Shown here one piece after another: positions 3,862 to 64,000 of a stretch of 64,000 nucleotides of DNA (positions within the stretch are counted from its first letter, which is position 1; every line of letters begins with the position of its first letter). The notes under the pieces are model-generated. The model made no database searches. It saw nothing but the letters and a program-made list of their open reading frames with translations, and had not been told where the DNA came from. The position numbers and the translations under genes were made by a program. Where the stretch lies: IMG/VR virus record IMGVR_UViG_3300042402_002641, positions 216,020 to 280,019 of that record; one strand, written 5' to 3'.

Positions 3862-4533
3862 ATGATGAATTCAACAGAGAACAAAATGTCAGAAAATCAA
3901 TCAAAAATCTCCGAGATCCCCCAGGCCCGACCAAATGAAACGGGCGGTTTCCATTTTGAAGGACACATTAAGATCTTTGATCCTAACACCAAAGAAGTGT
4001 TCATTGATAAACGTAACGCTATCCATTATGAAAATATGAGTGTGGCCATGGTGCAGAGTCTTAGCAATCAAGGTCAGGGAACAATTTATCAAATGGCGTT
4101 TGGTTCTGGAGGCACAATCGTTGATCCAACTGGCCTGATAACATATCTAACACCTAATACTATAGGAGTTAACTCTAGTTTATACAACCAAACCTATGTA
4201 AAAGTTGTAGATCAAAACGCTATTGAAAATACAGACCCTGCTAGAAATCTCATGCAGGTAAGACATATCAGTGGCGCTACTTACAGTGATATTCTAATCA
4301 GTTGTTTACTAGACTATGGAGAACCTCTAGAACAACAGGCCTTTGATAACTCAGTCGACATGAATGGAAATTTCGTTTTTGATGAATTAGGATTAATTAG
4401 CTACAATCCTAATGGCGCAGGAAAACTGCTGACGCATGTGATATTTCATCCGGTGCAAAAAAGTTTAAACAGACTGTTACAGATCGATTATACAATCCGT
4501 GTACAGAGCTTAACCGGTTTCACAGAGGTATAA
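3862..4533 (+). CDS. Baseplate/tail-associated structural protein
   Basis: 223-aa ORF between structural genes, with a C-terminal 'FDELGL...LLTHVIFHPVQKS' segment. The start may instead be 3865 or 3886. Confidence 0.55.
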   Translation: MMNSTENKMSENQSKISEIPQARPNETGGFHFEGHIKIFDPNTKEVFIDKRNAIHYENMSVAMVQSLSNQGQGTIYQMAFGSGGTIVDPTGLITYLTPNTIGVNSSLYNQTYVKVVDQNAIENTDPARNLMQVRHISGATYSDILISCLLDYGEPLEQQAFDNSVDMNGNFVFDELGLISYNPNGAGKLLTHVIFHPVQKSLNRLLQIDYTIRVQSLTGFTEV

Positions 4534-50271: not shown

Positions 50272-50532
50272 TTATCTTTTTACTGCAGAGCCAGCACCAA
50301 ACAAACTAGTGCTTTGATCTAGGGCATTTTTGGCCGTGCCGTCCTTGTTTTTAGGCTGGTGAACCTTGGGTTGTGGGGGTGATTTAGTACCTCCAGGGCC
50401 CCCCGGCTTGCCTAAATAGCTGGTCTTTCCTCGAGCTTTTCCTGGGCTAATATGCGGATTTACCACAGTACCTATGCTAGCAGCTGAAGTAGCACCGGCA
50501 GTAGCTGATTCTATGATTTCTTGTATTTTCAT
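50272..50532 (-). CDS. Small putative internal head protein
   Basis: N-terminal 'MKIQEIIE'. ATAAATA 5 nt upstream. Confidence 0.55.
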   Translation of the reverse strand: MKIQEIIESATAGATSAASIGTVVNPHISPGKARGKTSYLGKPGGPGGTKSPPQPKVHQPKNKDGTAKNALDQSTSLFGAGSAVKR

Positions 50533-55547: not shown

Positions 55548-55913
55548 CTAATAACTATAACGGATTTCTGTGATCGTGCCTTCTTCCAGCTGGTAAGCAG
55601 CACGGATATACACGAATTTGCCTGTGAATGTACACGCAGCGTTATTTGTTAGGGGGGTACTATCAATAGCGGTCAATGTTACATCAGCACTATCATAGAC
55701 TATATCAAACCAATCCGCATCACCAGGATACAGTTCTAGAGTAGCCTGTATCTTGACGGATCCTTTGAAATTATCAAACTCAAATACCGCGGTATGGACT
55801 CCGTTGTTGTTTCGGTAGTAACCTGCAGCTGGACTTTTGGCAGAATATTGATAGTTGGGATACTGACTGTTATCAGCAGTAGCGGCCAGCAGTACACGAG
55901 TTTGATTGGACAT
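55548..55913 (-). CDS. Beta-rich late protein (possible virion protein)
   Basis: 'FKGSVKIQATL...W...FTGKFVYIRA'. ATAAATA 4 nt upstream (55918-55924). Confidence 0.55.
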   Translation of the reverse strand: MSNQTRVLLAATADNSQYPNYQYSAKSPAAGYYRNNNGVHTAVFEFDNFKGSVKIQATLELYPGDADWFDIVYDSADVTLTAIDSTPLTNNAACTFTGKFVYIRAAYQLEEGTITEIRYSY

Positions 55914-55916
55914 CAG

Positions 55917-56597
55917 TTATTTATCGGAGATAACAAAGTTGTAGATCTTGCCCACCACTTCGGCATTACGCAGCTTCATCATTAACAGGGTCTGATCATC
56001 TTCTACCAACACATATCTGCGATCCCAGTTCCAGTCTGTGGCCAAAAACCATTTTTCCACAGCAGGTGTGCAGGTCACATGTGGTATCTGTGTTTTTAAC
56101 CAGTCGATATAGCGTTTTTTGCCTGGACGATCGTTGGCCATTTTATGTGGTAATAGATATACCCTGTAGTTGAATCTATCTTTGGGTAGTTTTTTTACAG
56201 TAATAGAGTTTTTATTTTCGTTAAGTATGTCTATAGAATCTGTTGAAGGCTCGAAACAGTGTTTTAACTGAGATCCAAATTTAATAATTGCACCGTTATA
56301 AAAATCTACATCATTGGTGTACAGATCGATAGTGTTACGTTCTATTCTTGTGGCGTATTGTGTCTTATCATAAACTTCTAAAAACTCACATAGGACTAGA
56401 ATTTCCTCACGATTATTCCAATATTCTAGTTTGTATCGATATCGGTCAATTTCGGGTTCAGGACCTTTACAGAAATCTTTGATTGCATCAATGGTATGCA
56501 ATCTCAGCATTGTGCAACCTCTGAGATTTACAGTAACCTTGTACAGCCATTTGCCGTAGAATTTATGATTGGTGTATTTGATTTTCTGGTTCTGCAT
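55917..56597 (-). CDS. Hypothetical protein
   Basis: 226 aa, overlapping the clpA 3' end. Confidence 0.65.
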   Translation of the reverse strand: MQNQKIKYTNHKFYGKWLYKVTVNLRGCTMLRLHTIDAIKDFCKGPEPEIDRYRYKLEYWNNREEILVLCEFLEVYDKTQYATRIERNTIDLYTNDVDFYNGAIIKFGSQLKHCFEPSTDSIDILNENKNSITVKKLPKDRFNYRVYLLPHKMANDRPGKKRYIDWLKTQIPHVTCTPAVEKWFLATDWNWDRRYVLVEDDQTLLMMKLRNAEVVGKIYNFVISDK

Positions 56598-58917
56598 TTT
56601 TTCCAGCCTCTTCTAGACTCTGTTGTGCTTTCAGCAATTTGCGTTCAGCTTTGGTCAAAGGTTTAGGCAATTCAGTTACAACAAAATCTAGTTTATCATC
56701 TACGATATCTACAGTAACACGACCACCGTTAACTAGATCTCCAAACAGCACTCTGCGACTCAGGGGTGATTTAACTTCATTGTCTATCAATCTTGCCAAC
56801 GGTCTAGCACCCATCTTGGAATCATAGCCACGCTCTGCTAGATATTTTGCTGCCTTGGCGGTCAACACTATCTCTATGCCTTTGTCTTTGAGTTGTGAAT
56901 TGAGATCTCCCACAAACTTCTTAACAATCTGTTCAACCACTTTGTGGTCTAGCTTACCAAATTTGATAACAGCATCTAGTCGATTGCGGAATTCAGGCGC
57001 AAAGAATTTCTTAATGGCTTTGTCATCTTCGTCGTCACGCTCTAGTGTACCAAAACCTATCGAGTTACGTTCGTTGTCTGCGGCTCCTAGGTTACTGGTC
57101 ATAATAAGGATGCAGTTGCGGCCATCTGCTTGCTTACCATTTGAACCTGTGACAAATCCATTGTCCATGAATGCCAACAAGATGTTCATGACATCCGGGT
57201 GTGCTTTTTCTACCTCATCTAATAATAGAATGCTGTTAGCATGCTCTTGCAGTTTGGTAATCAGCTGTCCGGCATTGTCTTCGTAGCCCACGTATCCCGG
57301 AGGAGCTCCGATCAACCGTGCTACAGAATGTTTCTCCTGATATTCACCCATATCAAATCGAATCAACTGCATGCCCATCTTGTCTGCTAGTTGTTTGGCA
57401 GTTTCTGTTTTACCTGTGCCTGTTGGACCAGAGAATAAAAAACTACCAATGGGTTTGTTAGGAGCTTTCATGCCTGCCTGACTAACAAAGATTTTATCCA
57501 GCAGTGTTTCTACTGCACGATCCTGTCCATAGACTACACCCTTCATCTGAGAATCTAAATCACTGAGATTCTTTGATTCTTTTTGTGCCACGGTTTCTAA
57601 AGGCATGTTAATCATTTTACTCAACTCGTAAGTGACCTGTTCAATGTCTACAATCTGTGGTACACCTTCCATACCTTCATCATCTTTTAGTTTATATCTG
57701 GCGCTGGCACAATCTATAATGTCAATAGCCTTATCTGGCAGTTTTTTATCTGCCATGTATTTGACACTGAGTTTAACTGCCTGTTCTATAGCAGCATCTG
57801 ATATTTTTACATTGTGATGACTTTCGTAGTATTTTTTAAGTCCTTTTAGAATCTTTATAGACATTTCTTCAGACGGTTCTTCGATAGTCACACGTTGGAA
57901 TCTACGCATCAGAGCACGATCACTTTCAAAGTGTTTGCGATATTCTTCCCAGGTAGTAGATGCTATCAGCTTAATTACACCCTTGGTCAGTATGGGTTTC
58001 AGCATGTTGCTCATGTCGTTGGAACTTTGATTAGCTGCTCCTGCTCCCTGCATCATATGTGCTTCATCTATGAATAGAATAATTTTGCCTTTCTTTTCCA
58101 ACGCTGCTAACACTGCCTTGACACGTTCTTCAAAATCACCTCTATACTTAGACCCTGCCAACATGGCAGAAATATCTAAGGTATAGACCTGATGATCTTG
58201 TATGAATTTAGGAACCTTCTTTTCATGTATCTTGCGAGCGATACCTTCGGCGATGGCAGTTTTACCTACTCCGGGATCTCCTACCATCAACACATTGGCT
58301 TTGTTTCTACGAGCCAACACCAATTGTATTTTTTCAATTTCTTCATCGCGGCCAATTACTGGATCGAGTTTGCGTTGTTTGGCTTTGAGGCTGAGATTGG
58401 TGCAGAATTGATTGAGAATCCTATCGATCTGATTACTAGACACCTGTTTGATTTCTCCTTCAACATCCACAGACTCTGGTTGTACTATGTTTTCTTGGAA
58501 AAATTTAACAAACTTTTCTTTAGTGACTCCGCCTTTTTGTAGAAAGTAAAAACCAAAACTGTTCTTCTCACTGAGCACACTGATAATCACGTCAGCCACT
58601 TCCATGCGTTGACGTCCACTAAACAACACCTGAGTAAAACAGCGATTCAGCACACGCTCTACTGAATTAGTTTTTTTAGGTTTATAGTTTTTTTCTGCGG
58701 TCTTAATGTCGTTGAGATTGTTTTTTAGATAATGATCGAGATTGGTTTTAACAAAGGCAGCGTCTGCCCCAAAACTTTCTAACAGAGTGTAGGTTTCTTG
58801 ATCACTGATCATAGCATATACAATATGTTCTATGGTAATGTACTCATGTCCAAGACCTTTAGCCAAATTGATAGAGTTTTCAAAAATGTCTTGTAGGTGT
58901 TTGCTGGGTTCTATCAC
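56563..58917 (-). CDS. clpA: ClpA-like ATP-dependent Clp protease ATP-binding subunit
   Basis: Clp N domain, Walker A motifs GDPGVGKT and GPTGTGKT, pore loop GYVG and IGF ClpP-docking loop. No M domain. Confidence 0.88.
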   Translation of the reverse strand: MIEPSKHLQDIFENSINLAKGLGHEYITIEHIVYAMISDQETYTLLESFGADAAFVKTNLDHYLKNNLNDIKTAEKNYKPKKTNSVERVLNRCFTQVLFSGRQRMEVADVIISVLSEKNSFGFYFLQKGGVTKEKFVKFFQENIVQPESVDVEGEIKQVSSNQIDRILNQFCTNLSLKAKQRKLDPVIGRDEEIEKIQLVLARRNKANVLMVGDPGVGKTAIAEGIARKIHEKKVPKFIQDHQVYTLDISAMLAGSKYRGDFEERVKAVLAALEKKGKIILFIDEAHMMQGAGAANQSSNDMSNMLKPILTKGVIKLIASTTWEEYRKHFESDRALMRRFQRVTIEEPSEEMSIKILKGLKKYYESHHNVKISDAAIEQAVKLSVKYMADKKLPDKAIDIIDCASARYKLKDDEGMEGVPQIVDIEQVTYELSKMINMPLETVAQKESKNLSDLDSQMKGVVYGQDRAVETLLDKIFVSQAGMKAPNKPIGSFLFSGPTGTGKTETAKQLADKMGMQLIRFDMGEYQEKHSVARLIGAPPGYVGYEDNAGQLITKLQEHANSILLLDEVEKAHPDVMNILLAFMDNGFVTGSNGKQADGRNCILIMTSNLGAADNERNSIGFGTLERDDEDDKAIKKFFAPEFRNRLDAVIKFGKLDHKVVEQIVKKFVGDLNSQLKDKGIEIVLTAKAAKYLAERGYDSKMGARPLARLIDNEVKSPLSRRVLFGDLVNGGRVTVDIVDDKLDFVVTELPKPLTKAERKLLKAQQSLEEAGKNAEPENQIHQS

Positions 58918-58920
58918 TGT

Positions 58921-59766
58921 TTATATTCCCTGTTGTTGTAATTGTTTAATCTGTGCTCGTTGATTTTCGCTGAGATTCTGTGGCACATGCACTTTTAGTT
59001 TAACCAAAAGGTTTCCTCGCTGTCTATTTCTCATGTTAGGTAAACCTTCTCCTCTGCAACTCAATACCGTTTCTGGCTGTGTGCCAGCTGGCACAGTGAT
59101 GTTGAGTGTTTTATTGTCCAGAGTCTCTATAGTTAACGAGGTACCTAACATAGCATCCCAAACAGAAATCTGCTGTTCTAAGATCAAAGATGTATGATCT
59201 CTGTGAAATCGAGCATGCTGTTTGACTAACACATTTACTATGAGGTCTCCAGGTCTAAGACCCTGTATGGAATTATCTCCCATACCTTCGTAGCGTATCT
59301 GCTGACCATGTTCTATACCAGCGGGAATCACAATGTTGATCATCTTGTTCTTACCGCCAGGTATAGAAATCTCTGCATTGAGTTCCTTGCCCTGTAACAC
59401 ATCCTCTAACGTAATTTCTATAGTGATATTCAGTGTTTTATTTTTCCTTAGAGGTTCTCGACCAAATCCACCTCCGAAGCCAAAGTTTCCGAACAGATCA
59501 TTTAGATTGCCTGTGCCAAAGTGAAACTCAAATGGATTCTGTTGGCCTTGATGGTGAAAGCCCTGTTGATTGGGATCCATACCAGCATCAATCATTCTGC
59601 GTTTGTCCGGATCGCTGAGTGATTCATAAGCCGTAGAAATTTCTTTGAATTTGGCCTGATCACCTCCTCGATCGGGATGATGTTTCATAGCCATCGATCG
59701 ATAGGCTTTTTTGATTTCGGCGTCTGTGGCGCCTCTTTTTAATCCTAGGGTAGCGTAATAATCCAT
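58921..59766 (-). CDS. DnaJ class II (CbpA-like) co-chaperone
   Basis: J domain 'MDYY..LG...KKAYR...HHPD', G/F region and C-terminal domain. No CxxCxGxG Zn finger. Confidence 0.88.
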   Translation of the reverse strand: MDYYATLGLKRGATDAEIKKAYRSMAMKHHPDRGGDQAKFKEISTAYESLSDPDKRRMIDAGMDPNQQGFHHQGQQNPFEFHFGTGNLNDLFGNFGFGGGFGREPLRKNKTLNITIEITLEDVLQGKELNAEISIPGGKNKMINIVIPAGIEHGQQIRYEGMGDNSIQGLRPGDLIVNVLVKQHARFHRDHTSLILEQQISVWDAMLGTSLTIETLDNKTLNITVPAGTQPETVLSCRGEGLPNMRNRQRGNLLVKLKVHVPQNLSENQRAQIKQLQQQGI

Positions 59767-59772
59767 GTTTAT

Positions 59773-59801
59773 AGTATACAATAAAAATAGGACTACGTCA
59801 A
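59773..59801 (-). promoter_or_regulatory. Sigma70 promoter TTGACG-N17-TATACT (dnaJ, leaderless)
   Basis: 17-nt spacer, 6 nt to the ATG. Confidence 0.7.
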
Positions 59802-62570: not shown

Positions 62571-63319
62571 TGTTCTGTCCTTTTTAATAGCATAGACCTT
62601 GCGCCGTTGTTGAAAACAAAATTTTCGCCAACTTTATTTATATGGTAGTCACCTAATACTTTAGTAAGCCAAAACATTTCACTGCTGGCTGCCTCGTCTA
62701 CGGTATAGCCATCGTCTATGCCTTCTAGTATAGATTCTGTGGCACCGTCTTTGACTATCTGTAACTTGATAGAACGATCAAATGGTTTGTGGATGGTAAT
62801 GATGTCACCATCTAGAGTGAGATCATCCATTAAAGTTTTTGTGAAAAAGTCACGCACACTTTCTGTGCGCATGCGATCCATTAGTCCTTGATAAGCAGAA
62901 GAATTGTCAGGAATCTTTTTCTTTAGATTTTCTTCAGTGGCTTCGTGTACTTGATTTTCTTTATAATATTTAAATTTTAGATCATCTAGTCCTGTGAGTT
63001 TTTTCACACCGTAGGTGAGTTCTTTGATCTGCTCAGACAGTTTAGCTGTGCGAGCTATTTCTACAAACACAGAGTACTCGCCGCGGTTGTCTTCGCCGCT
63101 GCTGACATCTGCGTCTAACACAAAAGCATATCCCTTCTCGATAAATTCCATTAGATCCTTGGCCGGTGAACGATCGTTGACCTTGAAACTGATCACACAT
63201 ACGTCTTGATCTTCACCCATCTTGGATCTAAATGAATCTACCTCAAAGGTTGGATGAACCATTTCTTTGAGATCGTCGGCTCTGAGACCTTCGTTAAGCT
63301 GCTGGTGCTGGTTGTGCAT
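62567..63319 (-). CDS. Hypothetical protein (possible head-associated)
   Basis: Start refined to MHNQHQQLNEGL. Confidence 0.65.
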   Translation of the reverse strand: MHNQHQQLNEGLRADDLKEMVHPTFEVDSFRSKMGEDQDVCVISFKVNDRSPAKDLMEFIEKGYAFVLDADVSSGEDNRGEYSVFVEIARTAKLSEQIKELTYGVKKLTGLDDLKFKYYKENQVHEATEENLKKKIPDNSSAYQGLMDRMRTESVRDFFTKTLMDDLTLDGDIITIHKPFDRSIKLQIVKDGATESILEGIDDGYTVDEAASSEMFWLTKVLGDYHINKVGENFVFNNGARSMLLKRTEQ

Positions 63320-63827
63320 TTGCCATTTCCTGTGCTTGTTGTTCTGCAGGATCAATCTGTGCATTAACTCCTGATGCACTGACTATGTCCTCTATTTTGT
63401 TCTTGTCTAGTTCTGTGTAGCCTCGATTGATATCGTTCATTAACTTCTTAGGCATAGTGATTTTGATCATCCACACAGGTTCCTGATCGATCTTACCTTT
63501 GCGTGTGCCCGGGCGAATGTCATCCGGAGTCTTGATCTTGCGCACTTTTGATATAGCGGTTTCAGCTACCTGTACCTTGCAGCCGTACTCCAACAGTCTT
63601 TTTCCGCCTGCAGGCTCCGGCATGTCTTTTTCGGGCCACATAAATGTACATTCCACGAAATATCTGGATTCTTTAGGACCAGACACCAGTTCTCCGTCTA
63701 GCCAGTTGTCGTAGACATAGACATCTAGTTCGTCGATCACACGTTCAAAATCCTTGAGTAAATTCAAGCTGTTATTAGAACCGTAAACCTGTTCTATGTT
63801 AGCTATCACGTCTTTAATATCTGCCAT
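63294..63827 (-). CDS. Conserved hypothetical late protein
   Basis: Start MADIKD with GGGAG SD. ATAAATA at 63842-63848. Confidence 0.7.
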   Translation of the reverse strand: MADIKDVIANIEQVYGSNNSLNLLKDFERVIDELDVYVYDNWLDGELVSGPKESRYFVECTFMWPEKDMPEPAGGKRLLEYGCKVQVAETAISKVRKIKTPDDIRPGTRKGKIDQEPVWMIKITMPKKLMNDINRGYTELDKNKIEDIVSASGVNAQIDPAEQQAQEMANAQPAPAA

Positions 63828-63890
63828 AGTATCTCCCTTTGTATTTATCGCCAAAAATCAAACATAACACTTTACTTTTCCCACCATTGG

Positions 63891-63967
63891 TTAAATACAC
63901 ATGTGTTCGGCTACGGACACTACGGTTAGAGGTCCGTGCCTAACACTTACAGGAGGGCTAACCTTAT
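63891..63967 (+). promoter_or_regulatory. Late promoter TTAAATA and pseudoknotted 5' leader
   Basis: Stem 63903-63918/63932-63946. Loop GGTTAG (63924-29) is complementary to CTAACC (63958-63) just 3' of AGGAGG. Confidence 0.55.
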
Positions 63968-64000
63968 ATGAAGCGAAAAAGAGCGCAAGTACAGCAAAAA
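63968..64000 (+). CDS. Start of divergent gene, 3'-truncated
   Basis: AGGAGG SD followed by MKRKRAQVQQK. Confidence 0.6.
   Translation, partial: MKRKRAQVQQK

What the first reader, a model, noticed from the sequence alone, without database searches (positions are those of the whole stretch)
63891..63970. H-type pseudoknot enclosing the Shine-Dalgarno of the divergent gene
Seen: starting at the predicted late TSS, stem 1 is GUGUU-c-GGC-u-ACGGAC / GUCCGU-GCC-u-AACAC (14 bp). Its loop GGUUAG pairs perfectly with CUAACC located between AGGAGG and the AUG, so the SD is trapped in the pseudoknot connector. Inference: a riboswitch-like or protein-bound translational switch, possibly an undescribed cis-regulatory RNA. 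The downstream gene is cut off and cannot be identified here.
Basis: partly seen in the sequence, partly recalled or inferred. Interest (0 to 1): 0.62.

Follow-up and report, generated by a model that had tools for sequence, protein, structure and literature searches.

The report
5' hairpin on phage phoH mRNA
The hairpin is real and conserved: it sits at the very 5' end of a late mRNA for a PhoH-like ATPase in a freshwater jumbo phage. The proposed pseudoknot around the ribosome-binding site is a chance-level feature of this phage's closest relatives only, so this is most likely an ordinary mRNA-protecting leader.

Summary
Stem 1 (63903-63946) is a genuine RNA hairpin.
- It folds in all 47 distinct related leaders, with 95.7% of cells paired and 5 pairs changed on both sides.
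- G.U pairs outnumber A.C pairs 49 to 5, so the + strand RNA is what folds.
- It starts exactly at the transcription start inferred from a T4-type late promoter (TAAATA-N5).
- Pseudomonas phage PA5oct has an unrelated hairpin in the same position.

The cut-off downstream gene is a PhoH-like ATPase.

Stem 2 (GGUUAG/CUAACC) is not supported.
- All six pairs exist in only 5 of 48 distinct leaders. Most keep 3-4 pairs.
- Ten leaders with a changed loop or spacer, at least five changes on the best tree, never compensate.
- The spacer stays invariant while its supposed partners vary.
- Shuffles produce such a 6-bp match about 3% of the time.

A local hairpin, GAGG-GCUAA-CCUU (-4.1 kcal/mol), explains the pairing of the Shine-Dalgarno sequence (SD) better. 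It ranks in the most structured 4% of this genome's ribosome-binding sites and recurs in divergent relatives.

The best reading is a 5'-terminal stabiliser stem-loop plus a mildly masked SD. No Rfam family matches. Strong conservation of the loop's 5' half and of the spacer is unexplained and leaves room for a protein-bound operator.

The parts
63892..63897 (+). TAAATA, the -10-like element of a T4-type late promoter for the phoH-like gene
   Evidence: TAAATA is 11-fold enriched in intergenic DNA of the 280-kb genome, and 14 genes have TAAATA-N5-ATG. The motif and its 5-nt spacing to the hairpin are invariant in all 47 distinct related leaders, while the 5 nt themselves vary.
63903..63903 (+). 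Inferred transcription start (+1, G), the first paired base of the hairpin
   Evidence: Inferred from the TAAATA-N5-ATG leaderless genes. It has not been measured. Metatranscriptome contigs could not confirm it.
63903..63946 (+).
   Evidence: Across 44 aligned sequences 95.7% of cells pair, 5 pairs have changes on both sides, and 0 of 500 shuffles reach the observed covariation. RNAalifold predicts it independently. G.U 49 against A.C 5.
63919..63931 (+). Hairpin loop. The 5' half (ACUACGGU) is conserved; the 3' half varies in sequence and length.
   Evidence: Column identities are 0.85-0.98 for the 5' half and 0.45-0.60 for loop columns 32-34.
63951..63956 (+). Shine-Dalgarno AGGAGG, 11 nt before the AUG
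   Evidence: The spacing is longer than the 6-8 nt seen at other genes listed.
63953..63965 (+). Local SD hairpin: GAGG, pentaloop GCUAA, CCUU
   Evidence: It appears in the minimum-free-energy and centroid folds. Energy is -4.1 kcal/mol, within the most structured 4.3% of 345 ribosome-binding-site windows of the genome. 97.7% of cells pair but the pairs are nearly invariant. RNAalifold does not call it.
63958..63963 (+).
63968..64000 (+). Start of the PhoH-like ATPase gene (MKRKRAQVQQK...), cut by the end of the contig
   Evidence: The window ends at the end of the 280,019-bp contig. The full 246-aa gene is in L003:3120-3860(-), with Pfam PF02562 at E 8e-69.
63842..63847 (-). TAAATA of the divergent partner promoter. 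Inferred +1 is at 63836, giving a 9-nt leader
   Evidence: Read. It is conserved as TGTATTTAT on the + strand in all relatives.
63294..63827 (-). Divergent gene: virion structural protein (P0001), used to fetch relatives
   Evidence: phrog_12928, E 9e-28. 43% identical to the PA5oct virion structural protein.

Best explanation
The element is the 5' leader of a late mRNA for a PhoH-like ATPase in a freshwater jumbo phage related to Pseudomonas phage PA5oct.

Transcription from a T4-type late promoter (TAAATA-N5) starts at G63903. The first 44 nt fold at once into a stable stem-loop of about -22 kcal/mol that leaves no unpaired 5' nucleotide.

The most likely role of that flush hairpin is to protect the mRNA from 5'-end-dependent decay. 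In that pathway RppH removes pyrophosphate and RNase E then enters from the 5' end. The ompA and papA 5' stem-loops protect their mRNAs in this way.

Four or five nucleotides downstream, the SD pairs weakly with a CCUU tract just before the AUG. This small hairpin would damp translation initiation rather than switch it.

The loop-spacer complementarity that would make a pseudoknot is incidental in this lineage.

Shown here: the structure, its conservation, which strand folds, its position relative to the promoter, and the gene identity. Inferred: the exact transcription start, the stabilising function, and the damping of translation.
For: - The hairpin folds in every one of 47 distinct related leaders, at -17 to -25 kcal/mol.
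- 95.7% of cells are paired, 5 pairs have changes on both sides, and 0 of 500 shuffles reach the observed covariation.
- RNAalifold predicts the stem independently.
- G.U 49 against A.C 5 shows that the + strand RNA is the folding species.
- The promoter-to-hairpin spacing is an invariant 5 nt while those 5 nt vary in sequence.
- Fourteen genes with TAAATA-N5-ATG calibrate +1 to the first base of the hairpin.
- Divergent alleles (L056, L079, L055, L073) keep a 5' hairpin built on different inner stems.
- PA5oct shows the same synteny, with ATAAATA-N5-G followed by an unrelated 8-bp hairpin that is flush with +1.
- The SD hairpin is -4.1 kcal/mol, in the lowest 4.3% of the genome's ribosome-binding sites. 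Analogues occur in L055, L079, L056 and PA5oct.
- Base-paired 5' ends slow RNase E, and RppH needs unpaired 5' nucleotides (review PMC3997798, which lists the Belasco laboratory's ompA and papA papers).
- The motif occurs once in the genome, which fits a gene-specific leader.
Against: - The transcription start is inferred, not measured. Some metatranscriptome contigs run 13-19 nt past it, although contigs cannot show RNA ends.
- A pure stabiliser should tolerate any loop sequence. Here the loop's 5' half and the SD-AUG spacer are as conserved as codon positions 1-2 of the neighbouring gene (0.9 or more, against 0.65 at position 3).
- The loop motif and the spacer motif are always present together or absent together (37 with both, 10 with neither, 0 discordant). 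This hints at an extra, sequence-specific partner.
- The SD mini-hairpin is nearly invariant, so it has little covariation support. It is lost in L074, and RNAalifold does not call it.
- Only some other long-leader late transcripts in this genome start with a hairpin.
Confidence: 0.58

Rival explanations
1. Protein-bound translational operator. The hairpin loop (ACNACGGU) and the invariant SD-AUG spacer (GCUAACCUU) together form a binding site for a phage or host RNA-binding protein that represses or times PhoH translation. That protein could be the PhoH-like ATPase itself, which has a basic N-terminal tail, MKRKRAQ.
For: - The loop's 5' half and the spacer have column identities of 0.85-1.0, against 0.65 at synonymous sites.
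- The two motifs co-occur in 37 of 37 canonical leaders and are jointly absent in all 10 others, with 5 coincident changes on the best tree.
- The spacer of the partner gene's ribosome-binding site varies freely in the same genomes.
- The ribosome-binding site is unusually structured.
Against: - No second copy of the motif exists in the genome, so it is not a regulon operator.
- The two motifs lie 40 nt apart, so one recombination event can swap both. Only 1 of the 5 coincident changes is forced by well-supported branches.
- No protein partner has been identified, and protein-RNA binding cannot be tested with these tools.
- Divergent alleles and PA5oct keep the hairpin but not these sequences.
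Confidence: 0.2
2. An H-type pseudoknot, in which the loop GGUUAG pairs with CUAACC, traps the SD in the connecting strand and acts as a riboswitch-like or protein-stabilised translational switch.
For: - The six Watson-Crick pairs are present in the window, with a duplex energy of -8.4 kcal/mol.
- A minimal GGU(U)/(A)ACC match persists in about 85% of distinct leaders.
- The spacer is the only place in the phoH mRNA complementary to the loop.
- The loop motif and spacer motif co-occur.
Against: - All 6 bp exist in only 5 of 48 distinct leaders. Most have 4 bp, and many have 3 because the fourth U becomes C, A or G with no change in the spacer.
- The inner four pairs are paired in only 56% of cells.
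- Ten leaders with altered loops or spacers (L022, L033, L037, L046, L055, L056, L073, L074, L079, L080), at least five changes on the best tree, show no compensation. Their duplex energies run from +1.3 to -2.5 kcal/mol, apart from an unrelated A/U match in L073 and L080.
- L056, L079 and PA5oct have loops of 3-5 nt that cannot form a pseudoknot.
- Spacer bases C, U and A stay invariant while their supposed partners vary.
- About 3% of shuffles give 6 bp.
- The pseudoknot competes for the same CC with a local hairpin of -4.1 kcal/mol.
- No Rfam match.
Confidence: 0.07
3. DNA-level element. The dyad ACGGAC-N13-GTCCGT next to the promoter is an operator for a dimeric DNA-binding regulator of late transcription, not an RNA structure.
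For: It is an inverted repeat directly downstream of a promoter, with high sequence conservation in both arms.
Against: - G.U outnumbers A.C 49 to 5 in the stem, so pairing is kept on the + strand only.
- Compensatory double changes occur, and the inner stems are completely different in L056, L079 and PA5oct while the hairpin is kept.
- The arms carry bulges and are not a symmetric dyad.
Confidence: 0.04

Closest known systems
5'-terminal stabiliser stem-loops of bacterial mRNAs (ompA and papA 5' UTRs; Emory, Bouvet and Belasco 1992, listed in PMC3997798)
   Same: A stable hairpin at or within a couple of nucleotides of the 5' end, followed by a single-stranded linker and the ribosome-binding site. 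It is located in the 5' UTR of a protein-coding mRNA. The expected effect is a block on RppH and RNase E entry from the 5' end.
   Different: This one sits on a phage late transcript from a TAAATA promoter. Its sequence, and not only its structure, is strongly conserved, including half of the loop. Its effect on half-life has not been measured.
SD-sequestering hairpins such as fourU and ROSE RNA thermometers, and structured phage ribosome-binding sites
   Same: The SD purines pair with a short pyrimidine tract in cis (GAGG with CCUU, and AGGAG with CUUUU in PA5oct).
   Different: The hairpin has only 4 bp at -4.1 kcal/mol. The anti-SD lies downstream, between the SD and the AUG. There is no evidence of temperature or ligand control, and covariation support is minimal.
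H-type pseudoknot translational operators (T4 gene 32 leader; ribosomal protein S15 and S4 operators)
   Same: A 5' leader hairpin whose loop is complementary to a segment near the ribosome-binding site of an autoregulated gene.
   Different: In those systems both stems are conserved and necessary. Here stem 2 fails the comparative test, and no binding protein is known.
phoH leader of Pseudomonas phage PA5oct (gp190; NC_071039.1)
   Same: The synteny is the same: phoH divergent from a virion protein, followed by DnaJ and a Clp ATPase. The architecture is also the same: ATAAATA-N5-G, a hairpin flush with +1, and an SD hairpin at the start codon.
   Different: The hairpin sequence is unrelated and A/U-rich, with 8 bp and a 3-nt loop. 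The leader is longer and the start codon is UUG. The PA5oct paper does not describe the feature.

Membership tests
H-type pseudoknot / riboswitch-like cis-regulator | Both helices are conserved and supported by compensatory changes across relatives | tested here: not met
   Stem 1 meets this. In stem 2 the inner four pairs are 56% paired, the two GC pairs never covary, and ten leaders with a changed loop or spacer (at least five changes on the best tree) do not compensate.
H-type pseudoknot / riboswitch-like cis-regulator | Complementarity exceeds the chance expectation | tested here: not met
   A run of 6 or more Watson-Crick pairs appears in 2.7-3.4% of shuffles, and in 20-41% if G.U is allowed. 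This is not remarkable for one hairpin picked from a 64-kb scan.
H-type pseudoknot / riboswitch-like cis-regulator | Match to a curated RNA family | tested here: not met
   There is no Rfam 15 hit at E up to 10 on the window's end or on the complete leader in L003.
5'-terminal stabiliser stem-loop (ompA type) | A stable hairpin within 0-2 unpaired nucleotides of the mRNA 5' end | tested here: inconclusive
   The hairpin starts at the inferred +1, based on the TAAATA-N5 rule from 14 leaderless genes. The same holds in relatives and PA5oct. The 5' end itself was not measured, and RNA contigs are uninformative.
5'-terminal stabiliser stem-loop (ompA type) | The structure, rather than the sequence, is what is maintained | tested here: met
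   Double changes and many G.U intermediates occur. Inner stems are unrelated in L056, L079, L055, L073 and PA5oct. Added sequence conservation in the main clade goes beyond this feature.
5'-terminal stabiliser stem-loop (ompA type) | Removing the hairpin shortens the mRNA half-life in an RNase E / RppH-dependent way | not testable with these tools
   This needs reporter and half-life experiments.
T4-type late promoter | A TATAAATA-like -10 element alone, with no -35 element, and a start about 6 nt downstream | tested here: met
   TAAATA is 11-fold enriched in intergenic DNA. It occurs in the gene-sense orientation, with a sharp peak of 14 genes at N5-ATG.
T4-type late promoter | The phage encodes gp55/gp33-like late transcription factors | not tested
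   These were not searched for. The contig is estimated to be 79% complete.
PhoH-like ATPase (downstream gene) | PF02562 domain with a Walker A motif | tested here: met
   L003 has a 246-aa protein with PF02562 at E 8e-69. Five divergent relatives score E 1e-68 to 1e-71. The GPAGTGKT motif is visible.

The most novel reading that the evidence does not exclude
The canonical leader is an autogenous translational operator for the phage PhoH-like ATPase. Its conserved loop (CUACGGUU) and spacer (UAACC) together form a composite, possibly transiently paired, site that resembles the base of 16S rRNA helix 45. PhoH/YbeZ-type proteins are suspected to act near that helix together with YbeY (PMC5101352). 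Excess PhoH would then bind its own mRNA, as ribosomal proteins do with rRNA mimics.
Probability: 0.04. Interest if true: 0.75.

Novelty: new member of a known kind. Interest (0 to 1): 0.3.

Why it matters
phoH is one of the commonest auxiliary genes in aquatic phages, and its function and regulation are unknown.
- A conserved leader shows that, in PA5oct-like jumbo phages, phoH is expressed from a late promoter and is under post-transcriptional constraint.
- The TAAATA-N5 rule, the set of leaderless late genes and the flush 5' hairpin give concrete, testable features of late gene expression. PA5oct is a cultured member of the group in which to test them.
- For the scan itself, the result is a caution. 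A perfect 6-bp loop-to-tail match next to a real hairpin is expected by chance at the percent level and needs comparative support.

Tried and rejected
- **Rfam.** Searching the window's end and the complete leader in L003 found nothing relevant.
- **Phage DNA searches.** Near and distant DNA searches of the phage collection found no match. Relatives came from a protein-anchored search instead.
- **Loose hairpin patterns.** Scans of viral contigs and genome contigs returned mostly chance G+C-rich matches. After filtering, they added 8 leader variants of the same clade and one contig binned in a MAG.
- **Metatranscriptome contigs.** They cover phoH and the leader, and depth falls between L003 3916 and 3966. 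Some contigs extend 13-19 nt past the predicted start, and contigs cannot show RNA ends, so this gives no verdict on the transcription start.
- **16S rRNA mimicry.**
  - The loop's best match in E. coli 16S is helix 45 (9 of 13 identical at position 1520, and a 9-nt exact complement to 1506-1514).
  - 83% of shuffled loops do as well somewhere in 16S, and the spacer's best match is elsewhere.
  - The idea is kept only as a low-probability speculation.
- **Long-range partner for the loop.** None was found elsewhere in the phoH mRNA.
- **Intrinsic terminator, or RNase III site.** No U-run follows the hairpin on either strand, the flanking genes diverge, and 14 bp is short for RNase III. These points were read.
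- **Repeated regulatory site.** Rejected, because the covariance model and word searches find a single copy in the genome.
- **Alternative pairing of loop ACGG with the 3' strand CCGU.** This is not conserved (inspection).

Full report
**What is in the window**

- The 5' strand GTGTT-c-GGC-t-ACGGAC is at 63903-63918, and the 3' strand GTCCGT-GCC-t-AACAC is at 63932-63946. Between them is a 13-nt loop.
- The loop contains GGTTAG at 63924-63929. AGGAGG is at 63951-63956, CTAACC at 63958-63963 and the ATG at 63968.
- Folded as RNA, 63891-64000 gives the hairpin with a minimum free energy of -29 kcal/mol, z = -2.5.
- The same fold also contains a small hairpin that pairs GAGG of the SD with CCUU.
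- The window ends at the end of a 280,019-bp linear IMG/VR contig. That is why the gene is cut after 11 codons.

**Context and the downstream gene**

- The neighbouring genes on the minus strand are virion proteins, an endolysin, a holin-like protein, DnaJ and a ClpB-like ATPase.
- The divergent gene (P0001, 63294-63827, minus strand) is 43% identical to a virion structural protein of Pseudomonas jumbo phage PA5oct.
- PA5oct has the same gene order: phoH divergent from the virion protein, then DnaJ and a Clp ATPase.
- A locus search anchored on P0001 returned 80 related viral contigs.
- In L003, where P0001 is 100% identical, the cut gene is complete. It is a 246-aa PhoH-like ATPase, PF02562 at E 8e-69.
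- The five most divergent relatives tested also encode PhoH behind their leaders.
- Sequencing runs that hold this DNA are mainly lake-water metagenomes.

**Transcription start**

- In the whole genome TAAATA is 11-fold enriched in intergenic DNA.
- The distance from the motif to the start codon has a sharp peak. Fourteen genes have exactly TAAATA-N5-ATG and four have N4.
- That pattern is what a T4-type late promoter produces when it drives leaderless mRNAs. It places +1 on the sixth base after the motif.
- For phoH, TAAATA is at 63892-63897, so +1 is G63903, the first paired base of the hairpin.
- In all 47 distinct related leaders the spacing is exactly 5 nt, although those 5 nt differ in sequence.
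- Contigs from four metatranscriptomes cover phoH and the leader. Depth falls between L003 3916 and 3966, around the predicted start at 3925. Some contigs run 13-19 nt further, and contigs cannot show RNA ends.

**Stem 1 is real**

- Every one of the 47 distinct leaders folds into the hairpin, at -17 to -25 kcal/mol.
- On a 44-sequence alignment 95.7% of cells pair and five pairs show changes on both sides. All covariation measures exceed the shuffles, and sliding the partners abolishes the pairing.
- RNAalifold predicts the stem without guidance.
- G.U cells outnumber A.C cells 49 to 5, so the + strand RNA is what folds. A DNA dyad or the opposite strand would not show that asymmetry.
- The outgroup alleles keep a hairpin at the same place with different inner stems. 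L056 and L079 have short loops, and L055 and L073 have long hairpins.
- PA5oct has ATAAATA-N5-G followed by an unrelated A/U-rich 8-bp hairpin that is flush with +1.
- A covariance model of the leader finds a single copy in the phage genome. Exact words of the stem are also unique.

**Stem 2 is not supported**

- The full six pairs occur only in the window, L003, L005, L025 and L029.
- Most leaders keep four pairs (GGUU/AACC).
- Many keep three, because the fourth U is C, A or G while the spacer stays CUAACC.
- In the alignment the inner four pairs are paired in 56% of cells, and the two GC pairs never covary.
- Ten leaders in which the loop or the spacer has changed (L022, L033, L037, L046, L055, L056, L073, L074, L079, L080) show no compensation. 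On the best tree they amount to at least five changes.
- L056, L079 and PA5oct have loops too short to reach the spacer.
- The conservation pattern contradicts pairing. Spacer bases C, U and A are about 0.9 conserved, while their supposed partners in the loop are 0.45-0.60.
- Shuffling the loop or the downstream 24 nt gives a Watson-Crick run of 6 or more in about 3% of trials, and in 20-41% with G.U. For one hairpin selected from a 64-kb scan this is within chance.

**What holds the SD**

- The local hairpin GAGG-GCUAA-CCUU has -4.1 kcal/mol.
- Among 345 ribosome-binding-site windows of this genome, only 4.3% are as structured, and the median is -0.1.
- Comparable SD hairpins form in L055 (-3.8), L079 (-4.0), L056 (-2.0) and PA5oct (-4.4). 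In PA5oct the SD pairs with CUUUUG, which includes the start codon. The hairpin is lost in L074.
- Its pairs are 97.7% kept but almost invariant, and RNAalifold does not call it. It is therefore a plausible but weakly supported feature.
- It uses the same CC as the proposed stem 2, so the two structures exclude each other.

**What remains unexplained**

- In the main clade the loop's 5' half (ACNACGGU) and the spacer (GCUAACCUUA) are as conserved as codon positions 1-2 of the neighbouring gene (0.91 and 0.97). Position 3 there is 0.65.
- The two motifs are present together in 37 leaders and absent together in 10, with none discordant. There are five coincident changes on the best tree of the flanking proteins, of which only one is forced by well-supported branches.
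- The motifs are 40 nt apart, so whole-leader allele replacement can explain the co-occurrence. A shared sequence-specific partner, such as a protein, is the main rival explanation.
- No other complementary partner for the loop exists in the phoH mRNA.
- The loop resembles the 3' strand of E. coli 16S helix 45. This is intriguing because YbeZ, a PhoH-type protein, interacts with the 16S 3'-end maturation factor YbeY (PMC5101352). It is not statistically significant, because 83% of shuffled loops do as well somewhere in 16S.

**Mechanism and verdict**

- The best-supported reading is a 5'-terminal stem-loop that begins at +1 of a late phoH mRNA.
- By analogy with the ompA and papA 5' hairpins, and given that RNase E and RppH need an accessible 5' end (PMC3997798), it most likely stabilises the transcript.
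- A weak local hairpin then moderates SD access.
- The pseudoknot is incidental.
- The element is not in Rfam. The PA5oct omics paper, searched for 'promoter', 'PhoH', 'late' and 'ncRNA', does not mention phoH at all and reports only TATAATA/TTGAC-type promoters.
- It is a new member of a known kind of leader element, of modest interest.

- Read laying was given 1,501 letters.
- No alternative genetic code was used.
- The large protein searches were not needed.

Noticed in passing
whole genome G000; in the window e.g. 50272-50532(-) and 55548-55913(-): Fourteen genes have TAAATA-N5-ATG and four have N4. That puts the inferred late transcription start on or next to the A of the start codon, so a sizeable set of late genes appears to be leaderless.
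   Followed up: partly
window 63828-63847 (-): The divergent virion-protein gene has its own TAAATA (63847-63842 on the minus strand). The inferred +1 is at 63836, and the 9-nt leader starts directly with GGAG. The two back-to-back late promoters are only about 45 bp apart, and both are conserved in all relatives.
   Followed up: partly
L216 (JBDNIA010000082.1, 3.4-kb contig): The only true hit for the leader among 185,579 species genomes is a short contig binned in a Crocinitomicaceae (Bacteroidota) MAG. This is either a host hint or a binning artefact.
   Followed up: no
L003 3100-4600 (equivalent to the window's end plus the missing phoH gene): Relatives of this locus occur in contigs of six metatranscriptome runs (lake, river, freshwater and one marine), four of which were laid on it. 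Many RNA contigs break at L003 3844, where the PhoH N-terminal region becomes hypervariable, while the leader upstream of it stays alignable.
   Followed up: partly
window 63968-64000 and L003:3120-3860(-): The PhoH-like proteins all begin with a short basic tail (MKRKRAQ, MKRKKQ or MKRKHK). A stretch variable in length and sequence follows, before the conserved ATPase core.
   Followed up: no
window 56563-59781 (-): A ClpB-like double-AAA ATPase (784 aa) and a DnaJ homologue (286 aa) lie next to the lysis and virion genes, as in PA5oct.
   Followed up: no
window 63920-63928 compared with E. coli rrsH 1506-1514 (L305): The loop CUACGGUUA is an exact 9-nt complement of the 5' strand of 16S helix 45, and is 9 of 13 identical to the 3' strand. 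This is not significant by shuffling.
   Followed up: yes
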